A stretch of 64,000 nucleotides of DNA from positions 172,017 through 236,016 of IMG/VR virus record IMGVR_UViG_3300049043_000112. One strand, given 5' to 3'. Both the position numbers and the translations under genes were made by a program. Below are positions 22,465 to 48,586 of the stretch, piece by piece; position 1 is the first letter of the stretch; each line of letters begins with the position of its first letter. The notes beneath the pieces are model-generated. The model was not told where the DNA came from. It searched no databases and saw only the letters and a program-made list of their open reading frames with translations.

Positions 22465-22563
22465 GTAGTAAGACCATCAGGGAAATGGTGGAGTTACTAT
22501 GCTCCCCGCACCCTTAGCGGGGATATGAGAGACTGTGTTTAACCTCCCCATAGGTCTCGGTTA
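22465..22563 (-). ncRNA. PhotoRC-II-like structured 5' UTR of psbA
   Basis: GAGAC/GTCTC pairing, CCCCGC-TAAGGGT-GCGGGG hairpin and ACCAT-TTCCCTG-ATGGT hairpin before the ATG; matches my recollection of the cyanophage psbA leader motif. Confidence 0.7.
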
Positions 22564-22613
22564 GGAAGAGGAACTCGTTACAGAAAGTTAACGTTCCGTA
22601 ACATTTGTTTACC

Positions 22614-39808: not shown

Positions 39809-39935
39809 GTTCGCCATGCACGCCACCAATTCTTTAACTGGAAATTGGAAACCAGGCGGGAGAGAGTCCCATCCGCACCACTTGCTTTTAAGGGAAAGCA
39901 AGAAACCAAATAGGGTCATATTTGACTCCACCAGT
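39809..39935 (-). ncRNA. wcaG RNA motif-like structured RNA
   Basis: Several UGGYG elements, CCAAUU/AAUUGG and CUUGC/GCAAG stems, CUGG/CCAG pseudoknot potential; lies upstream of a WcaG-type epimerase. Confidence 0.65.
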
Positions 39936-40816: not shown

Positions 40817-40819
40817 TTG

Positions 40820-40875
40820 AAGGCAGGTGCGGTATCCCCTTTCGGTTCCCATGCTCCTTTTGCTTTCCTTACCTT
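40820..40875 (-). ncRNA. Unnamed structured RNA candidate, copy 1
   Basis: Near-identical to 47472..47551; starts just after TTGACA-17-TATAAT and ends 3 nt before tRNA-Pro. Confidence 0.65.
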
Positions 40876-40889
40876 ACCTACTAATTATA

Positions 40890-42260: not shown

Positions 42261-42270
42261 AAATAAGTCC

Positions 42271-42528
42271 TCAACGGACTTCAAAGTCTAAACGTCTAAC
42301 TTTACGCTGACGCCTTGCTTCCTGAAAAGCAAGATCTTCATTCGTAAGAACACCAGACTTTGATTTATTATGATAAGAGTTTAACATAATAATAGAGGAT
42401 AAGTCAACTGCCGAAATCTTATCCCCACGAATAGTCGCCATATTTGGACAACCACACGTCACCATTTTACTTTGATGCCCCTCTAACTCCTTACCACAGG
42501 AGCGGCATCTGATTCTTAAATTTTCCAT
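42271..42528 (-). CDS. Zn-ribbon hypothetical protein
   Basis: CRSC...CGC. Confidence 0.7.
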   Translation of the reverse strand: MENLRIRCRSCGKELEGHQSKMVTCGCPNMATIRGDKISAVDLSSIIMLNSYHNKSKSGVLTNEDLAFQEARRQRKVRRLDFEVR

Positions 42529-42542
42529 TTCTCATTACCAGT

Positions 42543-42986
42543 TTATTCTAATACAGAACGAAGCATCCAATGGAACTTACCATGTGTTTCCATTATAGTT
42601 TGAACAAGATTTGAAGTTGCAAATTGTTTTTGTGCATCTGCTTCTTCAGAAACATCAGCAAATAGTTCAACGATTTTTTTATTATCGTCTCTTAACTGTT
42701 TAACCATCTCTTTTGCATCAATATCTTGTGCGCTATTGGATGCCTGGTCAATGTGTGATACTTCTGTGATTCTTGAAAGAGTACTTACGGGTTTCATATC
42801 CAAGTATCTCATATGTTCAGTCAGAGTATCAATCTCTTCAAACATTGTTTCATACTGCCCACCAAAAAGAGTATGCAGTTGCTGAAAATCAGGACCAACT
42901 ACATCCCAGTGATAAATCCAAGTTTTTTGGAATAGAACAAAAAGTGACGCCTGGGCATCACTCAATAGTTTAAAGAGCTTTTCCAT
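42543..42986 (-). CDS. dps: Dps / ferritin-like DNA-protection protein
   Basis: HWDVVG..F..LH..F..QY......D...E. Confidence 0.9.
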   Translation of the reverse strand: MEKLFKLLSDAQASLFVLFQKTWIYHWDVVGPDFQQLHTLFGGQYETMFEEIDTLTEHMRYLDMKPVSTLSRITEVSHIDQASNSAQDIDAKEMVKQLRDDNKKIVELFADVSEEADAQKQFATSNLVQTIMETHGKFHWMLRSVLE

Positions 42987-43012
42987 TATACCAGTTTTTT
43001 AGGTATTTATAA

Positions 43013-43084
43013 TGGGCAATATCGGATTCGAACCAATGACCGTCTGCGTGTAAAGCAGCTGCGCTACCGCTGCGCCAATCGCCC
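43013..43084 (-). tRNA. tRNA-Val(UAC)
   Basis: Cloverleaf; anticodon loop TT TAC AC. Confidence 0.93.
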
Positions 43085-43091
43085 GTTCAAT

Positions 43092-43256
43092 TTAATGTTT
43101 TTCCATTAAATATTCTACGGTATTTGCTACATCATTCATAGCATCTCGCAAATAAGTTTGTTGTCCAGATTCTTGACGAACAATCGGGCGATGGTCATCG
43201 GTAAGTGTCCACCGCCAAAGGTTCATATCTTTACAATACCAAAGATTAATTTTCAT
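43092..43256 (-). CDS. Conserved cyanophage hypothetical protein (54 aa)
   Basis: MKINLWYCKDMNLWRWTL..., manual translation. Confidence 0.6.
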   Translation of the reverse strand: MKINLWYCKDMNLWRWTLTDDHRPIVRQESGQQTYLRDAMNDVANTVEYLMEKH

Positions 43257-43457
43257 TCTTATACTGCTCCAAACGTACCCAGTTGATAAGTGTATTCAGT
43301 TCATACAACTCTTGTTTGTATGTAGCATATCTGGATAGTTCGGGTCATCAACTAGTTGCGAATCTTCAATAAAAGAAATTTCACTTTTCAGAAAATCAGC
43401 ATAATGCTCAAAGGCAGTAATGGCAAGTTGCCTGTCTAGTTGGGAAAGAAGGGACAT
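43246..43457 (-). CDS. Hypothetical protein (frameshift at about 43330)
   Basis: MSLLSQLDRQLAI...; restoring one A gives ...YELNTLINWVRLEQYKNEN-stop. Confidence 0.55.
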
Positions 43458-43478
43458 AAAACCTTTAACTCGTTACCT

Positions 43479-43512
43479 AGTATAGACTAAAAAGGGGGTT
43501 GTGTCAACCCCC
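43479..43512 (-). promoter_or_regulatory. pstS terminator overlapping a sigma70-type promoter
   Basis: GGGG-TTGACACAA-CCCCC-TTTTT; TTGACA-17-TATACT. Confidence 0.7.
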
Positions 43513-43518
43513 TGTATA

Positions 43519-44497
43519 TCAATTCTCTCCTAGACCAACTTGCTTGACCTTCAGGCGGGCACGGTTCAGAACTGAACCAGCAAGAGGAACATAACCCAGG
43601 TCATCAGCGATAGACTGCGCTTTGCCACTCAGAGCATAGTTCAGAGCATCACGGACTGCCTGTGCCTTACCAGGAGCATAACCACTCTTATAGGCAATAA
43701 TCCAGGTCAGAGTGGAGATAGGATATGCCTGAAGCACCTGCGGGGTTAGGGTCTTCACCAGCAAGAGTTACGGGATCCAGTTTGATTCCGTTCAGAGCAG
43801 CGGCACCAGTCACGGCAGAAGGTCCAACGAACTTACCTGCCTTGTTCTGAATAACTGCTGCTTGGAGTTTGTTGGCACGGACAAATCCAGTGTTCACATA
43901 ACCAATACCACCAACAGTGTTCTTAATGGTTCCAGCAACACCTTCATTGCCCTTAGAACCAACACCAGTAGGCCAGTTGATAGACTTACCTACACCAGGA
44001 GCCCAACCACCAAAAGCATCCAGAGAGTTGGTGAAGGCAAAGGTGGTTCCAGAACCATCAGAACGATGAACAACCATCATCTTACCAGCAGCACAACCAA
44101 CTTGCTTGTAATCGTTAATGCGACCAGAGAAAATATCAACAACTTGTTTCTGCGTCAGTTTCAGTTTGCAACCAGGCTTGTTATAAGCAATCGCAATCGT
44201 TCCACCGACCATAGGAATCTGAACGACACCACGCTTTACCTTTGCCGCTTCCTTTGCCTTGATAGGTTCATCAGAAGCACCGAAGTCAACGGTTCCAGCA
44301 ACGAACTGACGGATACCAGCACCAGAACCAACGGACTGATAGTTTACACGGTCACCAGAAGACACAGAGTAGTCTTGGAACCAGCGTTGGTAGATAGGTG
44401 CGGGGAAGGTGGCACCAGCACCATTAATGACAGGTCCAGCAAGTGCGGTAGTGGGAGCAAGGGCAAGACCGATTGTAGCAATGTGTTTAAGTTTCAT
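43519..44497 (-). CDS. pstS: Phosphate-binding protein PstS (frameshift at about 43733)
   Basis: GAGATFPAP, YQSVGSGAG, DFGASD, RSDGSGTT and AYPISTLTW; the two ORFs join by removing one T. Confidence 0.95.
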
Positions 44498-44522
44498 AAA
44501 AATTAAAAACTTCGTAGTAATT

Positions 44523-44552
44523 TTACTTGATTTAGATTAAGAGAAGGTTAAA
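44523..44552 (-). promoter_or_regulatory. Pho box upstream of pstS
   Basis: TTTAACCT-tct-CTTAATCT-aaa-(TCAAGTAA): 11-bp period, matching the cyanobacterial YTTAAYYW consensus. Confidence 0.75.
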
Positions 44553-44566
44553 TATGTCCAAACACC

Positions 44567-44591
44567 AAAAAACCTCCCCGAAAGGAGGTTT
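44567..44591 (-). terminator. Intrinsic terminator after the porin gene
   Basis: AAACCTCC-TTTCG-GGGAGGTTTTTT. Confidence 0.8.
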
Positions 44592-44610
44592 AGAGGTATC
44601 TAAGATATTA

Positions 44611-46098
44611 TCAGAAACGGAAGGTAGTCTGAATCACACCACCATAGTTAGAAGAAGCATTCTTCAGACCTTGGTTGTTGGACACATAGAACACCGCAGG
44701 GGTGATGCTGATGTTATCGCTAACCTTGTAACGATAGAAGGTTTCCCACATAATAGCATCCTTACACAGAGTCTCTGCGTTACCAGGAGCACCGATGGCA
44801 AAACCAGCAGCATTACCCTTAGCAAAAACATCGCTCCACTGAACACCGGCCATCCAAGTCTGCGAATTGGTAGCAGCATTAGGAGTTGCGGGACCACTTA
44901 CATAGTTCCAACCGTAAGCAGCACTCACAGAAGGAATGATACCAGAGGTCTTAGGCTGCCAGTAAGCATTCAGAGCATAACCGTTAGAGGTTTGGTTAGC
45001 AGCAAGAGTACCAGCATTACCAGCAACACCGTTAAAGGTGCGAATACGGGTTCCTTCAGTACCATTACGATAACCGAAAGCAATGCCATACTGAGGAGCA
45101 CGATAACCAAATTGTGCCAGAGTATTCAGAGCACCAGAGGCATCAAATTCACCTTTGGTTGAATCGTTACCATTCTGAGCAACATAGTTGATACCAGCAA
45201 CGAATCCACCCTTACCTTTCTTGGTAGGTTGTGACCATTGAGCACCGAAACCAGCACCAGTTGCCTTGTTATAGACACCAGGAGCACCAGCAACTTGGAA
45301 GAAGTCAAGAATATCCGACTTATATGCAGAAGGAATCCAAGCGATTTCAGTGTTACGAACCTGAGCACCGGCGGTAAGCATTACACCCTTTGCAAGTCCA
45401 GGGAAGGTGTAATACAAACGATCCAGAGTCATCGTGTTCGCATAGGTTTCTGCCTTGTCCAGTTTGAACAGGGAAGAAGAGGAACCGAATGGTTGACTGG
45501 AGAAGTTACCAGAACGCAAACGGGTCTTGAGCAAATCCTTACCTGTGAAGGAAGTATCAAAACTCAGGCGGAGGTCATAGTTGAAAGCGGTATTTCCGAC
45601 ATTGCTGCTGTTAGCAAGACGAGCACCGTCTACACCACCAAGAACGAAAGTTGCTTCACCCTTAAGTTTGGTAGTCGTGGAGAACTGTTGTGCTTGAAGA
45701 GTACCAACTTGAGTTTCAAGTTTAGCAACACGACCTTTGATGACTGCAAGTTCCTTAGCAAACTCATTCGCAAGACGATTGAGTTCATCGGTAACTTCAG
45801 TCACGCGATCTAGACAAGCATTCAGAAGTGCAGCTGCTTCAAAACGGGTCATTGCCTGACCACCACGGAAGGTTCCGTTTTCATAACCAGCAACACAACC
45901 ATAACGCTCAACAAGATTGCTGAGTGCCTGATAAGCCCAGTCAGTGGGTTTTACATCAGACAGTTGGTTGATGCTCGTGACTTGTTCCGTGCTGGCATAT
46001 TGGTTGACTGCTGCCATATTAAGATCTGCGGCATTCGCAGCAACAGGAGCAACCATTCCCAGAGCAACAGGTGCAAGCATCAGTTGTTTGAGTTTCAT
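44611..46098 (-). CDS. Cyanobacterial Som/OprB-type outer-membrane porin with SLH domain
   Basis: Signal peptide, SDVKPTDWAYQALSNLVERYGC SLH motif, FSTTTKLKGE, C-terminal TTFRF. Confidence 0.92.
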   Translation of the reverse strand: MKLKQLMLAPVALGMVAPVAANAADLNMAAVNQYASTEQVTSINQLSDVKPTDWAYQALSNLVERYGCVAGYENGTFRGGQAMTRFEAAALLNACLDRVTEVTDELNRLANEFAKELAVIKGRVAKLETQVGTLQAQQFSTTTKLKGEATFVLGGVDGARLANSSNVGNTAFNYDLRLSFDTSFTGKDLLKTRLRSGNFSSQPFGSSSSLFKLDKAETYANTMTLDRLYYTFPGLAKGVMLTAGAQVRNTEIAWIPSAYKSDILDFFQVAGAPGVYNKATGAGFGAQWSQPTKKGKGGFVAGINYVAQNGNDSTKGEFDASGALNTLAQFGYRAPQYGIAFGYRNGTEGTRIRTFNGVAGNAGTLAANQTSNGYALNAYWQPKTSGIIPSVSAAYGWNYVSGPATPNAATNSQTWMAGVQWSDVFAKGNAAGFAIGAPGNAETLCKDAIMWETFYRYKVSDNISITPAVFYVSNNQGLKNASSNYGGVIQTTFRF

Positions 46099-46153
46099 AA
46101 AAAGTTTTTTGTATGTACTAAACGACAAATAAAGGGTTTTAAAGAAAACCGCA

Positions 46154-46249: not shown

Positions 46250-46321
46250 AGCGGAGTATCGGATTCGAACCGACGACATCTAACTTGGAAGGATAGCGTT
46301 CTACCACTGAACTAACTCCGC
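46250..46321 (-). tRNA. tRNA-Gly(UCC)
   Basis: Cloverleaf; loop CT TCC AA. Confidence 0.93.
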
Positions 46322-46323
46322 AA

Positions 46324-46396
46324 TGGTGGGGATTTACCCGACCTCAGGTTTCCCTTCATAGGCACGGAACCCCACGCACTTCACTTCACACGGACA
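46324..46396 (-). ncRNA. Kink-turn-containing hairpin RNA candidate ending in CCA
   Basis: GUGGGG/CCCCAC stem enclosing CC-UAU-GA-AGG-GAAA-CCU-GA-GG; follows TTGACA-18-TATACT. Confidence 0.55.
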
Positions 46397-46432
46397 TATG
46401 AAGTATAAGACATAATCGAGTATTATGTCAAG

Positions 46433-46503
46433 AGCCCCGACAAGATTCGAACTTGCGACCAGCGGTTTACAAAACCGCTGCTCTACCACTGAGCTACAGA
46501 GGC
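46433..46503 (-). tRNA. tRNA-Thr(UGU)
   Basis: GCGGT-TT TGT AA-ACCGC; acceptor 3' strand one G short (probable homopolymer error). Confidence 0.9.
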
Positions 46504-46593
46504 GAAACAGGGAGGCCATCCCCCTGACCTAAAAATATTCTAGGTTTTAGTTGGAAGGAGTGCTCTTGAAGGTTATCGCAGGATCACTTCCAA

Positions 46594-47463: not shown

Positions 47464-47471
47464 ATAAGATG

Positions 47472-47551
47472 AAGGCAGGTGCGGTATCTCCTCCCAATAG
47501 TACAAAACTAATATTGGAAGGTTCCCATGCTCCTTTTACTTTCCTTACCTT
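47472..47551 (-). ncRNA. Unnamed structured RNA candidate, copy 2 (expanded hairpin)
   Basis: Same 32-nt and 20-nt flanks as 40820..40875; GAAA loop replaced by a 28-nt insert extending the stem; between tRNA-Asp and tRNA-Glu. Confidence 0.65.
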
Positions 47552-47554
47552 CAA

Positions 47555-48127: not shown

Positions 48128-48586
48128 TCAAGTCCAAAGATTATGGTCATATTCCCAATGGCAGTTTGGACATAACGGCATTATATTTTCTTTTGAGTTT
48201 ATAATGCTAATCATAACATCTTCACTAAAAGAAGAAATAGGTTTTATATGTGCAACTTCGATATGTTTATCGTATCCGCATCTAACACATTCAATAAAAC
48301 CAAGTTTTTTAGCAACTACTCTTGCGCGAGTTCTTACTAAAGCAAAGGCGGAAGACTTATGATGTTTTTCGTAAATTGCTTCTTTAAGTGTCATATCACC
48401 TAAAAACCCAGAACAGTTTATACATCTTTTGCTTCTATAATCAATTTCTTTATCACATAATTCACAATTATTTGGAAAATTAATTTTTTTTCTTTTTGGG
48501 TGATGAGTATTAGTCCATTTAGCAGAGCAACTTCTACTACAAAATTTAGGATTATTATGTTGTTTTCCGCAGGTTACACATTCCAT
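48128..48586 (-). mobile_element. HNH endonuclease with Zn-binding N-terminus, inserted in the tRNA array
   Basis: C..CGY...IEVAHIKP.......N...LCPNCHWE; late promoter at 48610..48617. Confidence 0.85.

What the first reader, a model, noticed from the sequence alone, without database searches (positions are those of the whole stretch)
46324..46396. Textbook kink-turn hairpin RNA ending in CCA, ahead of tRNA-Gly
Seen: CC-UAU-GA-AGG-GAAA-CCU-GA-GG (46342-46362) has a canonical stem, 3-nt bulge, tandem G-A/A-G pairs and a GNRA loop. It is nested in CCG/CGG and GUGGGG/CCCCAC stems followed by CA (…CCCCACCA), 2 nt before tRNA-Gly. It has its own promoter, whose spacer is a perfect palindrome (GACATAAT-N5-ATTATGTC). 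Known: K-turns bind L7Ae-family proteins and occur in riboswitches and T-boxes. Inferred: an independent small RNA or tRNA-end mimic.
Basis: partly seen in the sequence, partly recalled or inferred. Interest (0 to 1): 0.6.

Follow-up and report, generated by a model that had tools for sequence, protein, structure and literature searches.

The report
Conserved kinked hairpin before phage tRNA
A 50-base RNA hairpin with a kink-turn-like core sits just upstream of a tRNA gene in a family of uncultured freshwater cyanobacterial viruses; it is real, strongly conserved and undescribed, but it is not a tRNA-end mimic and its function is still unknown.

Summary

As a bare pattern, a K-turn hairpin is not unusual: 14 matches in the window against 15 in shuffles. 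Comparison with other phages makes it real:
- 74 further viral contigs carry the same 50–52-nt hairpin.
- All six genomes checked carry one copy.
- It is absent from 185,579 cellular species genomes and has no Rfam match.

The closing and tip helices covary. The middle helix, the internal loop, the GAAA loop and the G·A/A·G tandem hardly change. The hairpin is 95% identical across haplotypes whose flanking tRNAs are only about 80% identical. It nearly always ends 3–5 nt before a tRNA (Gly, Leu or Met/Ile2), usually behind a conserved σ70-type promoter and a purine-rich 5′ motif.

The "CCA" end is not conserved. The 3b:3n pair is Watson-Crick, so the kink should need a partner, yet neither the phage nor a cyanobacterial control genome encodes an L7Ae-family protein. 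Sister phages carry a plain GNRA hairpin or a tRNA-like cloverleaf in the same slot.

Best reading: a portable structured module of a pre-tRNA 5′ leader, released by RNase P. Whether it acts in cis or in trans is open.

The parts
46432..46503 (-). tRNA-Thr(UGU), upstream neighbour
   Evidence: ARAGORN; Rfam tRNA, 59.4 bits
46402..46431 (-). Sigma-70-type promoter: TTGACA (46431-46426), 18-nt spacer, TATACT (46407-46402)
   Evidence: Consensus scan, 11 of 12. Both hexamers are kept in about 60 distinct homologous promoter variants, and in unrelated contexts whose spacers differ.
46409..46429 (-). Palindromic hairpin GACAUAAU-N5-AUUAUGUC, overlapping the -35 hexamer and the spacer
   Evidence: Unique in the window. 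Across loci it is kept by compensatory double changes and by changes that are G.U-compatible only on this strand.
46376..46395 (-). Predicted 5' single-stranded leader: inferred TSS near G46395, conserved purine-rich motif GUGUGAAGUGAAGUGC at 46391-46376
   Evidence: The motif is kept in front of all three insert types and in front of tRNA-Gly and tRNA-Leu. It is unique in the genome. An RNA-library contig ends at 46395. The TSS is inferred from its spacing to the -10 hexamer only.
46326..46375 (-). The conserved 50-nt hairpin module (whole element)
   Evidence: Covariance model R1 scores it 73.7 bits, E = 1e-18, and it is the only copy in the genome. 74 homologues score 68-81 bits.
46370..46375 (-). 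Closing helix, 5' strand GUGGGG, paired with 46331-46326 CCCCAC
   Evidence: 4 of its 6 pairs show changes on both sides across the family.
46332..46337 (-). Internal loop, 3' side GUAAAU, opposite UU at 46369-46368
   Evidence: Nearly invariant; only UU/GUAAAU or CA/GUAAGU are seen.
46361..46367 (-). Middle (C) helix, 5' strand CCG-U-GCC, paired with 46343-46338 GGUCGG
   Evidence: 100% paired and nearly invariant. The only changes are G-C to G.U switches on one side: two in this window's own copy and one in L041.
46344..46360 (-). K-turn consensus core and tip: bulge UAU (46360-46358), G.A/A.G (46357-46356 with 46345-46344), NC helix AGG/CCU (46355-46353 with 46348-46346), GAAA loop (46352-46349)
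   Evidence: In scans that left these positions free, the GA/GA tandem is kept in 72 of 74 loci (L186 and L187 have A at 1b). The NC helix covaries (AGG/CCU, AGAG/CUCU, AGA/UCU, AGGA/UCCU). The GAAA loop is invariant and the bulge is U-R-U.
46322..46325 (-). Linker CAUU between the hairpin and the mature tRNA 5' end; the inferred RNase P cleavage falls between 46322 and 46321
   Evidence: Its length is 3-5 nt and its sequence varies across loci. Cleavage is inferred from the universal role of RNase P.
46250..46321 (-). tRNA-Gly(UCC), the downstream tRNA
   Evidence: ARAGORN; Rfam tRNA, 68.9 bits

Best explanation
The hairpin at 46375-46326 (minus strand) is a conserved, virus-restricted structured RNA module. 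It forms the 3' part of the 5' leader of a phage pre-tRNA. Transcription starts at the sigma-70-type promoter at 46431-46402, with an inferred start near 46395. This gives a leader of about 74 nt: a purine-rich single-stranded 5' motif followed by the hairpin. RNase P cleavage at the tRNA-Gly 5' end (46322/46321) then separates the leader from the tRNA. The hairpin has three helices. A covarying closing helix and an invariant middle helix are separated by an invariant asymmetric internal loop. A K-turn-consensus loop then leads to a short covarying helix capped by an invariant GAAA loop. Because its 3b:3n pair is Watson-Crick, the K-turn should kink only when held by a partner, either a protein other than L7Ae or an RNA contact of the GAAA loop. 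I think the module most likely acts in cis as a leader or processing domain that sets how the first tRNA of the unit is matured or stabilised. As a by-product it would be released as a discrete small RNA. Shown here: existence, conservation, secondary structure, position relative to tRNAs, promoter conservation, and absence of a conserved CCA. Inferred: the transcription start, RNase P release, the kinked geometry, and the cis role.
For: Family and distribution: 74 viral contigs plus this window carry the hairpin; model R1 scores them 68-81 bits and nothing falls between those scores and noise. All six genomes checked carry one copy. None of 185,579 cellular species genomes holds it.
Structure: 97.5% of cells are paired, no shuffle out of 500 reaches the observed covariation score, and 6 pairs change on both sides. 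RNAalifold finds the same helices independently. G.U pairs fit only the minus strand.
Constraint: the hairpin is 95% identical across 31 haplotypes whose flanking tRNA-Thr and tRNA-Gly are 80-83% identical.
Position: it lies 10-14 nt (core end to tRNA start) upstream of tRNA-Gly(UCC) in 59 loci, tRNA-Met/Ile2(CAU) in 10 and tRNA-Leu(UAA) in 8.
Promoter: the hexamers are conserved across different spacers and contexts.
Slot: sister phages have a plain GNRA hairpin or a cloverleaf at the same place behind the same leader motif. Other long leaders in the window also end in a hairpin 3-4 nt before the tRNA.
Expression: contigs from three RNA libraries of three studies span the spacer, and one ends at the predicted start.
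Precedent: leader structure can control RNase P cleavage (abstract of PMC8925977), and RNase III takes part in maturing T4 tRNAs (PMC4810235).
Against: No experiment shows a transcript end, RNase P cleavage or a stable product. The RNA-library evidence comes from assembled contigs, which may derive from DNA. Nothing obvious links the three tRNA species served. Only one tRNA per genome has the module, which is odd for a general maturation device. The conserved 5' motif and the tight sequence conservation would suit a trans-acting RNA or a protein-binding RNA at least as well. In five loci a second hairpin separates the module from the tRNA. In one RNA contig the sequence after the hairpin is not a tRNA. 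The K-turn itself cannot be told apart from an extended form with a U-A pair and a 4x1 loop, because those columns never vary. A tip helix of either 3 or 4 bp, with no compensating change elsewhere, argues against a precise intramolecular docking of the tetraloop.
Confidence: 0.5

Rival explanations
1. The functional product is the excised RNA itself. On this view the module is a non-tRNA 'cargo' placed in a tRNA array so that tRNA-processing enzymes cut it out: RNase P at its 3' side, and the upstream tRNA's 3' processing or the promoter start at its 5' side. The released RNA of about 55-75 nt then acts in trans. It would do so either through the conserved purine-rich 5' motif (pairing with a target) or by binding and sequestering a host or phage protein through the K-turn and internal loop.
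For: The 5' motif is conserved independently of the insert type and of the downstream tRNA. In context 4 the hairpin occupies a tRNA-like position in an array, with spacers of 2 nt and 4 nt on either side. There is one copy per genome. The core sequence is more conserved than the neighbouring tRNAs. The T4 small RNAs RNAC and RNAD are expressed and have no known function (PMC9697503); from my own knowledge they lie in the T4 tRNA region.
Against: The phage genome holds no complementary site better than chance: the best non-self score is 13.5 against 13.55 +/- 0.44 for shuffled seeds. Context 4 lacks the 5' motif. No partner protein has been identified, and the phage has no L7Ae or Nop domain. 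No evidence shows that the RNA is stable.
Confidence: 0.27
2. The hairpin is a double-strand-specific processing site (RNase III type), like those of T7 early RNAs and the T4 tRNA precursor. Cleavage in or near the internal loop would trim the leader so that RNase P can then act.
For: RNase III is reported to take part in maturing T4-encoded tRNAs (PMC4810235). The element has two stacked helices separated by a conserved asymmetric internal loop, an architecture that, from my own knowledge, resembles phage RNase III sites. The leader's 3' end can extend the closing helix by 4 bp (AGUG/CAUU).
Against: The total helical length is short and is interrupted by a bulged U, the K-turn loop and the internal loop. 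The type B inserts in the same slot are only 6-8 bp plus a tetraloop, too short for a classical RNase III site. This model gives no reason for the conserved G.A tandem and GAAA loop.
Confidence: 0.1
3. The element is a decaying remnant of a former tRNA gene or a selfish insertion in the leader slot. It would have no function of its own, and its uniformity would reflect recent spread by recombination among closely related phages.
For: The same slot holds a tRNA-like cloverleaf in some phages and, in others, a short hairpin whose stem (commonly 7 bp) matches the length of a tRNA acceptor stem. The family shows very little sequence diversity and has no distant members.
Against: It is far more conserved than the flanking tRNA genes in the same haplotypes. 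It occurs in four different genomic contexts with different promoters and different tRNAs, yet its core is unchanged. Where it does vary, the changes are compensatory. A decaying relic should drift.
Confidence: 0.08

Closest known systems
Simple K-turn hairpins bound by L7Ae-family proteins (U4 snRNA 5' stem-loop, box C/D and C'/D' motifs, archaeal RNase P K-turns)
   Same: C helix with -1b:-1n = C:G, a 3-nt bulge, tandem G.A/A.G, a short NC helix closed by a loop, and a CUGA (box-D-like) 3' strand. Like box C/D K-turns, its sequence predicts no folding in metal ions alone. The published rule is that a Watson-Crick 3b:3n pair prevents ion-induced folding (PMC8191799, PMC4382518, PMC5689011).
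   Different: It is bacterial and viral. No L7Ae or Nop protein is found in the phage or in the cyanobacterial control genome. It has no box C (RUGAUGA) and no guide region. It sits in a pre-tRNA leader.
Bacteriophage T4 small RNAs RNAC and RNAD (species 1 and 2)
   Same: Small non-tRNA RNAs of a T4-like phage with no known function (PMC9697503). From my own knowledge they lie in the T4 tRNA region.
   Different: No sequence similarity was found: blastn of the spacer against 50,697 phage records hit only S-SRM01. The sizes and structures differ, and a stable product has not been shown here.
Structured 5' leader of the T4 tRNA precursor processed by RNase III before RNase P
   Same: A base-paired leader directly upstream of the first tRNA after a promoter in a T4-like phage. 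Host RNases act on it (PMC4810235 for the involvement of RNase III; the details are from my own knowledge).
   Different: The helices here are short and interrupted. The conserved K-turn consensus and GAAA loop are not features of RNase III sites.
T-box leader Stem I
   Same: A bacterial leader RNA with a K-turn that deals with tRNA.
   Different: T-boxes precede aminoacyl-tRNA synthetase and amino-acid genes and end in a terminator/antiterminator switch. This element precedes a tRNA gene, has no specifier or T-box sequence, and gives no Rfam T-box match.
Dicistronic tRNA-snoRNA genes of plants and tRNA-intron box C/D RNAs of archaea (from my own knowledge)
   Same: A K-turn RNA co-transcribed with a tRNA and released by tRNA-processing enzymes.
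   Different: Those are true box C/D guide RNAs with L7Ae-family partners. This element has no guide region and no such partners.

Membership tests
Standard simple kink-turn | 3-nt bulge followed on its 3' side by tandem G.A and A.G pairs (G1b.A1n, A2b.G2n) | tested here: met
   Present at 46360-46356 with 46345-46344. In scans that left these positions free, 72 of 74 homologues keep it; L186 and L187 have A at 1b.
Standard simple kink-turn | Watson-Crick C helix 5' of the bulge, commonly with -1b:-1n = C:G | tested here: met
   GCC/GGY helix with C:G at the -1 position; 100% paired and invariant.
Standard simple kink-turn | NC helix continues beyond the G.A pairs | tested here: met
   3-4 bp with compensatory changes: AGG/CCU, AGAG/CUCU, AGA/UCU, AGGA/UCCU.
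Standard simple kink-turn | Tightly kinked geometry with cross-strand A-minor contacts | not testable with these tools
   No RNA 3D tool or probing data were available. RNAalifold prefers an extended form with U(L1)-A(1n) paired, and both columns are invariant.
Standard simple kink-turn | Ability to fold: 3b:3n not Watson-Crick for ion-induced folding, otherwise a protein or tertiary partner is needed | tested here: inconclusive
   3b:3n is A:U in 73 of 74 homologues and in the window, and A.A in L170. The published rule predicts poor or no folding in Mg2+ alone (PMC8191799). No L7Ae-family protein is found in the phage or in Synechococcus elongatus, so the partner is unknown.
tRNA or tRNA 3'-end mimic (acceptor helix plus NCCA) | Conserved single-stranded NCCA after the terminal helix | tested here: not met
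   The tails are CAUU, CAUUU, CUU, CCAU, GUUU, AUUU, UCU, ACCU and ACUU.
tRNA or tRNA 3'-end mimic (acceptor helix plus NCCA) | Recognised by tRNA or tmRNA detectors, or has a T-arm | tested here: not met
   ARAGORN and the Rfam tRNA model find nothing at 46322-46431. No T-loop is present.
Any Rfam 15 family (including T-box, riboswitches, ribozymes, cyanobacterial and cyanophage motifs) | Covariance-model match | tested here: not met
   No match over the spacer, even at E up to 10. wcaG and PhotoRC-II elsewhere in the window show that the search works.
Box C/D RNA | Box C RUGAUGA and box D CUGA, a guide region, and L7Ae/Nop5/fibrillarin partners | tested here: not met
   CUGA is present, but the 5' strand reads UAUGAAG in the window and UGUGAAG in most homologues. 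There is no PF01248 or PF01798 protein in the phage.
Sigma-70-type promoter | -35 TTGACA and -10 TATAAT-like hexamers 16-18 nt apart | tested here: met
   11 of 12 matches with an 18-nt spacer. The hexamers are conserved across about 60 promoter variants and across contexts. Transcription initiation itself was not tested.
Protein-coding mini-ORF (GTG..TAA read through the hairpin) | Reading frame preserved among homologues | tested here: not met
   Core variants of 34 and 36 nt differ by 2 nt, which breaks the frame, and substitutions are compensatory in stems.

The most novel reading that the evidence does not exclude
Phage tRNA arrays carry a portable non-tRNA cargo. This would be a K-turn/GNRA hairpin cut out by the tRNA-processing machinery and acting in trans during infection. 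For example, it could be a decoy or scaffold for a host RNA-binding or RNA-processing factor, or a handle that docks on RNase P. The plain hairpin and the cloverleaf found in sister phages would be alternative cargos for the same slot.
Probability: 0.2. Interest if true: 0.7.

Novelty: new variant of a known kind. Interest (0 to 1): 0.45.

Why it matters
Phage tRNA clusters are usually read simply as codon-supply devices. A leader module that is better conserved than the tRNAs it accompanies, and that moves between different tRNAs, suggests that tRNA expression or processing is regulated during cyanophage infection, or that the arrays also deliver small non-tRNA RNAs. It would also be a rare bacterial-virus K-turn whose sequence predicts dependence on a partner, in a system without any L7Ae-family protein. 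That points to an unknown K-turn-binding factor or tertiary contact. Three alternative structured inserts behind one conserved leader also make a natural swap experiment.

Tried and rejected
- Rfam at gathering and at E up to 10 gave no family for the spacer or for the type C cloverleaf.
- tRNA-end/CCA mimic: rejected, because the tail is not conserved.
- Peptide ORF through the hairpin: rejected, because 2-nt indels break the frame.
- Repeated or mobile element within a genome: rejected, with one copy in each of six genomes.
- Host origin: the core was not found in 185,579 species genomes. The only hit is a chance match inside a coding sequence of a Dehalococcoidia MAG with no tRNA nearby.
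- Cultured phages: blastn found only S-SRM01, and that phage lacks the K-turn insert.
- L7Ae or Nop partner encoded by the phage: none found.
- Trans target in the phage genome for the 5' motif: nothing better than chance. A first attempt with duplex folding timed out.
- Leader-trailer pairing suggested by a single-sequence fold: rejected, because the trailers differ between loci.
- T-box-like specifier: a GGA codon is present in the leader motif, but the same motif precedes tRNA-Leu, so this was rejected.
- Intramolecular GAAA-receptor docking on the UU/GUAAAU loop: considered. The loop is not the canonical 11-nt receptor, and tip helices of 3 or 4 bp with no compensation argue against a precise fit. 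It was left as speculation.
- Two further scans that left the C stem and the K-turn free found no new variants, only chance hits L185 and L198.
- Neighbouring genes are a porin, PstS, Dps/ferritin and an HNH endonuclease. None is a candidate RNA partner.

Full report
**Setting.** The window is the last 64 kb of a 236-kb IMG/VR virus record that CheckV rates as complete. It carries wcaG and PhotoRC-II RNAs and 18 tRNA genes, all on the minus strand. Its nearest named relative is the freshwater Synechococcus phage S-SRM01 (Kyanoviridae). The public runs that share its words are mostly lake and freshwater metagenomes. The finding lies on the minus strand, in the 110-nt spacer (46431-46322) between tRNA-Thr(UGU) and tRNA-Gly(UCC).

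**The observation.**
- the C stem, the UAU bulge, the GA/GA tandem, the AGG/CCU helix and the GAAA loop (46362-46342);
- the CCG/CGG and GUGGGG/CCCCAC helices;
- CA followed by UU, then tRNA-Gly;
- a TTGACA-N18-TATACT site;
- the perfect palindrome in its spacer.

As a pattern alone this is weak. A generic K-turn-hairpin descriptor matches 14 times in the window, against 14.9 +/- 4.7 in dinucleotide shuffles. Requiring a GNRA loop leaves one match against 0.09 expected. The 52-nt hairpin on its own folds no better than shuffles. The case therefore rests on comparison with other phages.

**Homologues.** S-SRM01 shares the promoter and the next 21 nt, but it has only a 7-bp GAAA hairpin where the K-turn hairpin should be. 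Pattern scans of IMG/VR then showed three alternative inserts in one slot, all behind the same leader motif:
- Type A is the K-turn hairpin.
- Type B is a plain hairpin of 6-8 bp, usually capped by GNRA (about 30 loci).
- Type C is a 71-nt cloverleaf with a T-loop-like arm (17 loci). Neither ARAGORN nor Rfam recognises it.

Scans that forced only parts of the element recovered 74 type A loci in total, apart from chance hits (L155, L156, L185, L198). A covariance model built from 21 distinct sequences scores all of them 68-81 bits, with nothing between those scores and noise. The window's genome and five other large contigs each hold exactly one copy. A scan of one genome per prokaryote species found only a chance match inside a coding sequence of a Dehalococcoidia MAG. 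No isolate in the phage collection has type A.

**Structure.** On the alignment, 97.5% of cells form standard pairs, and no shuffle out of 500 reaches the observed covariation score.
- The closing helix has four pairs with changes on both sides, for example GUGGGG/CCCCAC, UGGAGG/CCUCCA and AGAGG/CCUCU.
- The tip helix covaries and changes length: AGG/CCU, AGAG/CUCU, AGA/UCU, AGGA/UCCU.
- The middle helix (CCG-U-GCC with GGCUGG), the internal loop (UU opposite GUAAAU, or CA opposite GUAAGU), the GAAA loop, the U-R-U bulge and the G.A/A.G tandem hardly change. One lineage has A at 1b, and one locus has A.A at 3b:3n.
- G.U pairs make sense only on the minus strand.
- RNAalifold finds the same helices but pairs L1 (U) with A1n. 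Both columns are invariant, so comparison cannot separate a kinked K-turn from an extended loop.

The invariance is not just recent ancestry. Among 31 distinct haplotypes the hairpin is 95% identical, while the flanking tRNA-Thr and tRNA-Gly genes are 80% and 83% identical.

**Is it a working K-turn?** The sequence meets the consensus, including -1b:-1n = C:G. However, 3b:3n is A:U. The published rules say that a Watson-Crick pair at that position gives poor or no folding in metal ions alone (PMC8191799, PMC4382518). That behaviour is typical of K-turns that depend on L7Ae-family proteins (PMC5689011). Neither the complete phage genome nor the Synechococcus elongatus control genome shows a PF01248 protein, and the phage has no Nop domain. 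If it kinks in vivo, it needs another protein or a tertiary contact. Docking of its own GAAA loop onto the internal loop is geometrically conceivable. But tip helices of both 3 and 4 bp occur without any compensating change, and that argues against a precise fit.

**Context.** The hairpin sits upstream of tRNA-Gly(UCC) in 59 loci, tRNA-Met/Ile2(CAU) in 10 and tRNA-Leu(UAA) in 8. It ends 3-5 nt before the mature 5' end, except in five loci where a second hairpin intervenes. Four contexts are seen:
1. tRNA-Thr, then the promoter and leader motif (this window and most loci);
2. the end of a coding sequence, then a different promoter and the leader motif;
3. another promoter and the leader motif;
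4. directly between two tRNAs, with spacers of 2 nt and 4 nt and neither promoter nor motif.

The tail is CAUU, CUU, CCAU, GUUU, AUUU, UCU and others, so the CCA is not conserved. The promoter hexamers are kept across about 60 variants. The palindrome in the spacer is kept by compensatory double changes (GACAGAA/UUCUGUC, GACGAAA/UUUCGUC, GACAAAAU/AUUUUGUC, GACAAUCUU/AAGGUUGUC) and by changes that are G.U-compatible only on the sense strand. This points to an RNA hairpin at the end of the tRNA-Thr transcript rather than a protein operator. The purine-rich motif GUGUGAAGGAAGUGC (GUGUGAAGUGAAGUGC in this window) begins within a few nucleotides of the predicted start. It is unique in the genome and has no better-than-chance complement in the phage. 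Other long leaders in the window also end in a hairpin 3-4 nt before the tRNA.

**Expression.** Contigs from three metatranscriptome libraries of three different studies cover the spacer and hairpin, carrying the family's majority variant. One 111-nt contig runs from 46395, the predicted start, into tRNA-Gly. Another spans tRNA-Thr to tRNA-Gly. Contigs cannot show ends or exclude DNA, so this is consistent with transcription but does not prove it.

**Explanation.** I commit to a portable structured module of a pre-tRNA 5' leader. It would be transcribed from its own early-type promoter and separated from the tRNA by RNase P. Most likely it acts in cis on the maturation or stability of the first tRNA of the unit (confidence 0.5). 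Three rivals remain:
- The excised RNA is the product and acts in trans or as a protein decoy (0.27).
- It is an RNase III-type processing site, by analogy with T4, where RNase III takes part in tRNA maturation (PMC4810235) (0.1).
- It is a functionless relic (0.08). The conservation figures count against this one.

The closest precedents in concept are T4 RNAC and RNAD, small T4 RNAs of unknown function (PMC9697503). From my own knowledge they lie in the T4 tRNA region.

**Verdict.** The 'CCA/tRNA-end mimic' and 'L7Ae binding' ideas are not supported.

Noticed in passing
L008:10125-10195 (+); also L004, L011, L059, L081, L089, L097, L098, L132: In sister phages the same slot (behind the same leader motif and before tRNA-Gly) holds a 71-nt cloverleaf. 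It has an 8-bp closing stem, a D-like arm, a stunted anticodon-like arm and a T-like arm whose loop, UGCGAAA, resembles a T-loop. ARAGORN and Rfam do not call it. It may be a degenerate tRNA or a tRNA-like RNA.
   Followed up: partly
window 40817-40886 (-) and 47465-47553 (-); also L072, L094, L098 upstream of tRNA-Gly: A second conserved leader motif precedes tRNA-Pro and tRNA-Glu: GGAGCAUGGGAACC, then a variable hairpin, then GGAGAUACCGCACCUGCCUU. It has conserved flanks around a variable insert and no Rfam match at gathering score.
   Followed up: no
window 46409-46429 (-): The palindrome inside the promoter spacer is a conserved sense-strand hairpin. It starts 3 nt after the tRNA-Thr 3' end and is kept by compensatory and G.U-compatible changes across loci. 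In context 2 a different 10-13-bp inverted repeat spans from the -35 hexamer to beyond the -10 hexamer. Its role is unknown; termination or 3' processing of the upstream transcript are possibilities.
   Followed up: partly
L143:3440-3475 (+) compared with window 46376-46391 (-): The leader motif GGUGUGAAGGAAGUGC matches 13 of 16 positions of GGUGUGAACGGAGUUC. That sequence is the variable-loop and T-stem region of the tRNA-Ile(UAU) that directly precedes the hairpin in context 4. The motif could be a relic of that tRNA. This was noticed after the fact and could be chance.
   Followed up: no
window 46324-46434, RNA run X21 (record 20): One 523-nt metatranscriptome contig matches the promoter-to-hairpin stretch. 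Beyond 46324 it continues into unlike sequence instead of tRNA-Gly, and it carries an Illumina adapter at the 46434 end. It is either a fifth context or a chimeric contig.
   Followed up: no
window 46504-46527 (-) and 42262-42284 (-); L133:585-610 (S-CAM3): Plain hairpins ending 3-5 nt before the mature 5' end also precede tRNA-Thr and tRNA-Ser(UGA) in this window, and tRNA-Gly in the marine phage S-CAM3. A 'hairpin, short U-rich linker, tRNA' layout may be general in cyanophage tRNA leaders.
   Followed up: partly
window 42543-46128 (-) and 48128-48586 (-): Host-like auxiliary genes lie directly downstream of the tRNA-Gly unit: an OprB/SLH porin (44611-46128), the phosphate-binding protein PstS (43688-44497) and a Dps/ferritin-like protein (42543-42986). 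An HNH endonuclease ORF (48128-48586) lies between tRNA-Arg(UCU) and the main tRNA array.
   Followed up: partly
window 39812-39910 (-) and 22489-22580 (-): There are strong matches to the known cyanophage RNA motifs wcaG (100 bits) and PhotoRC-II (71.6 bits).
   Followed up: no
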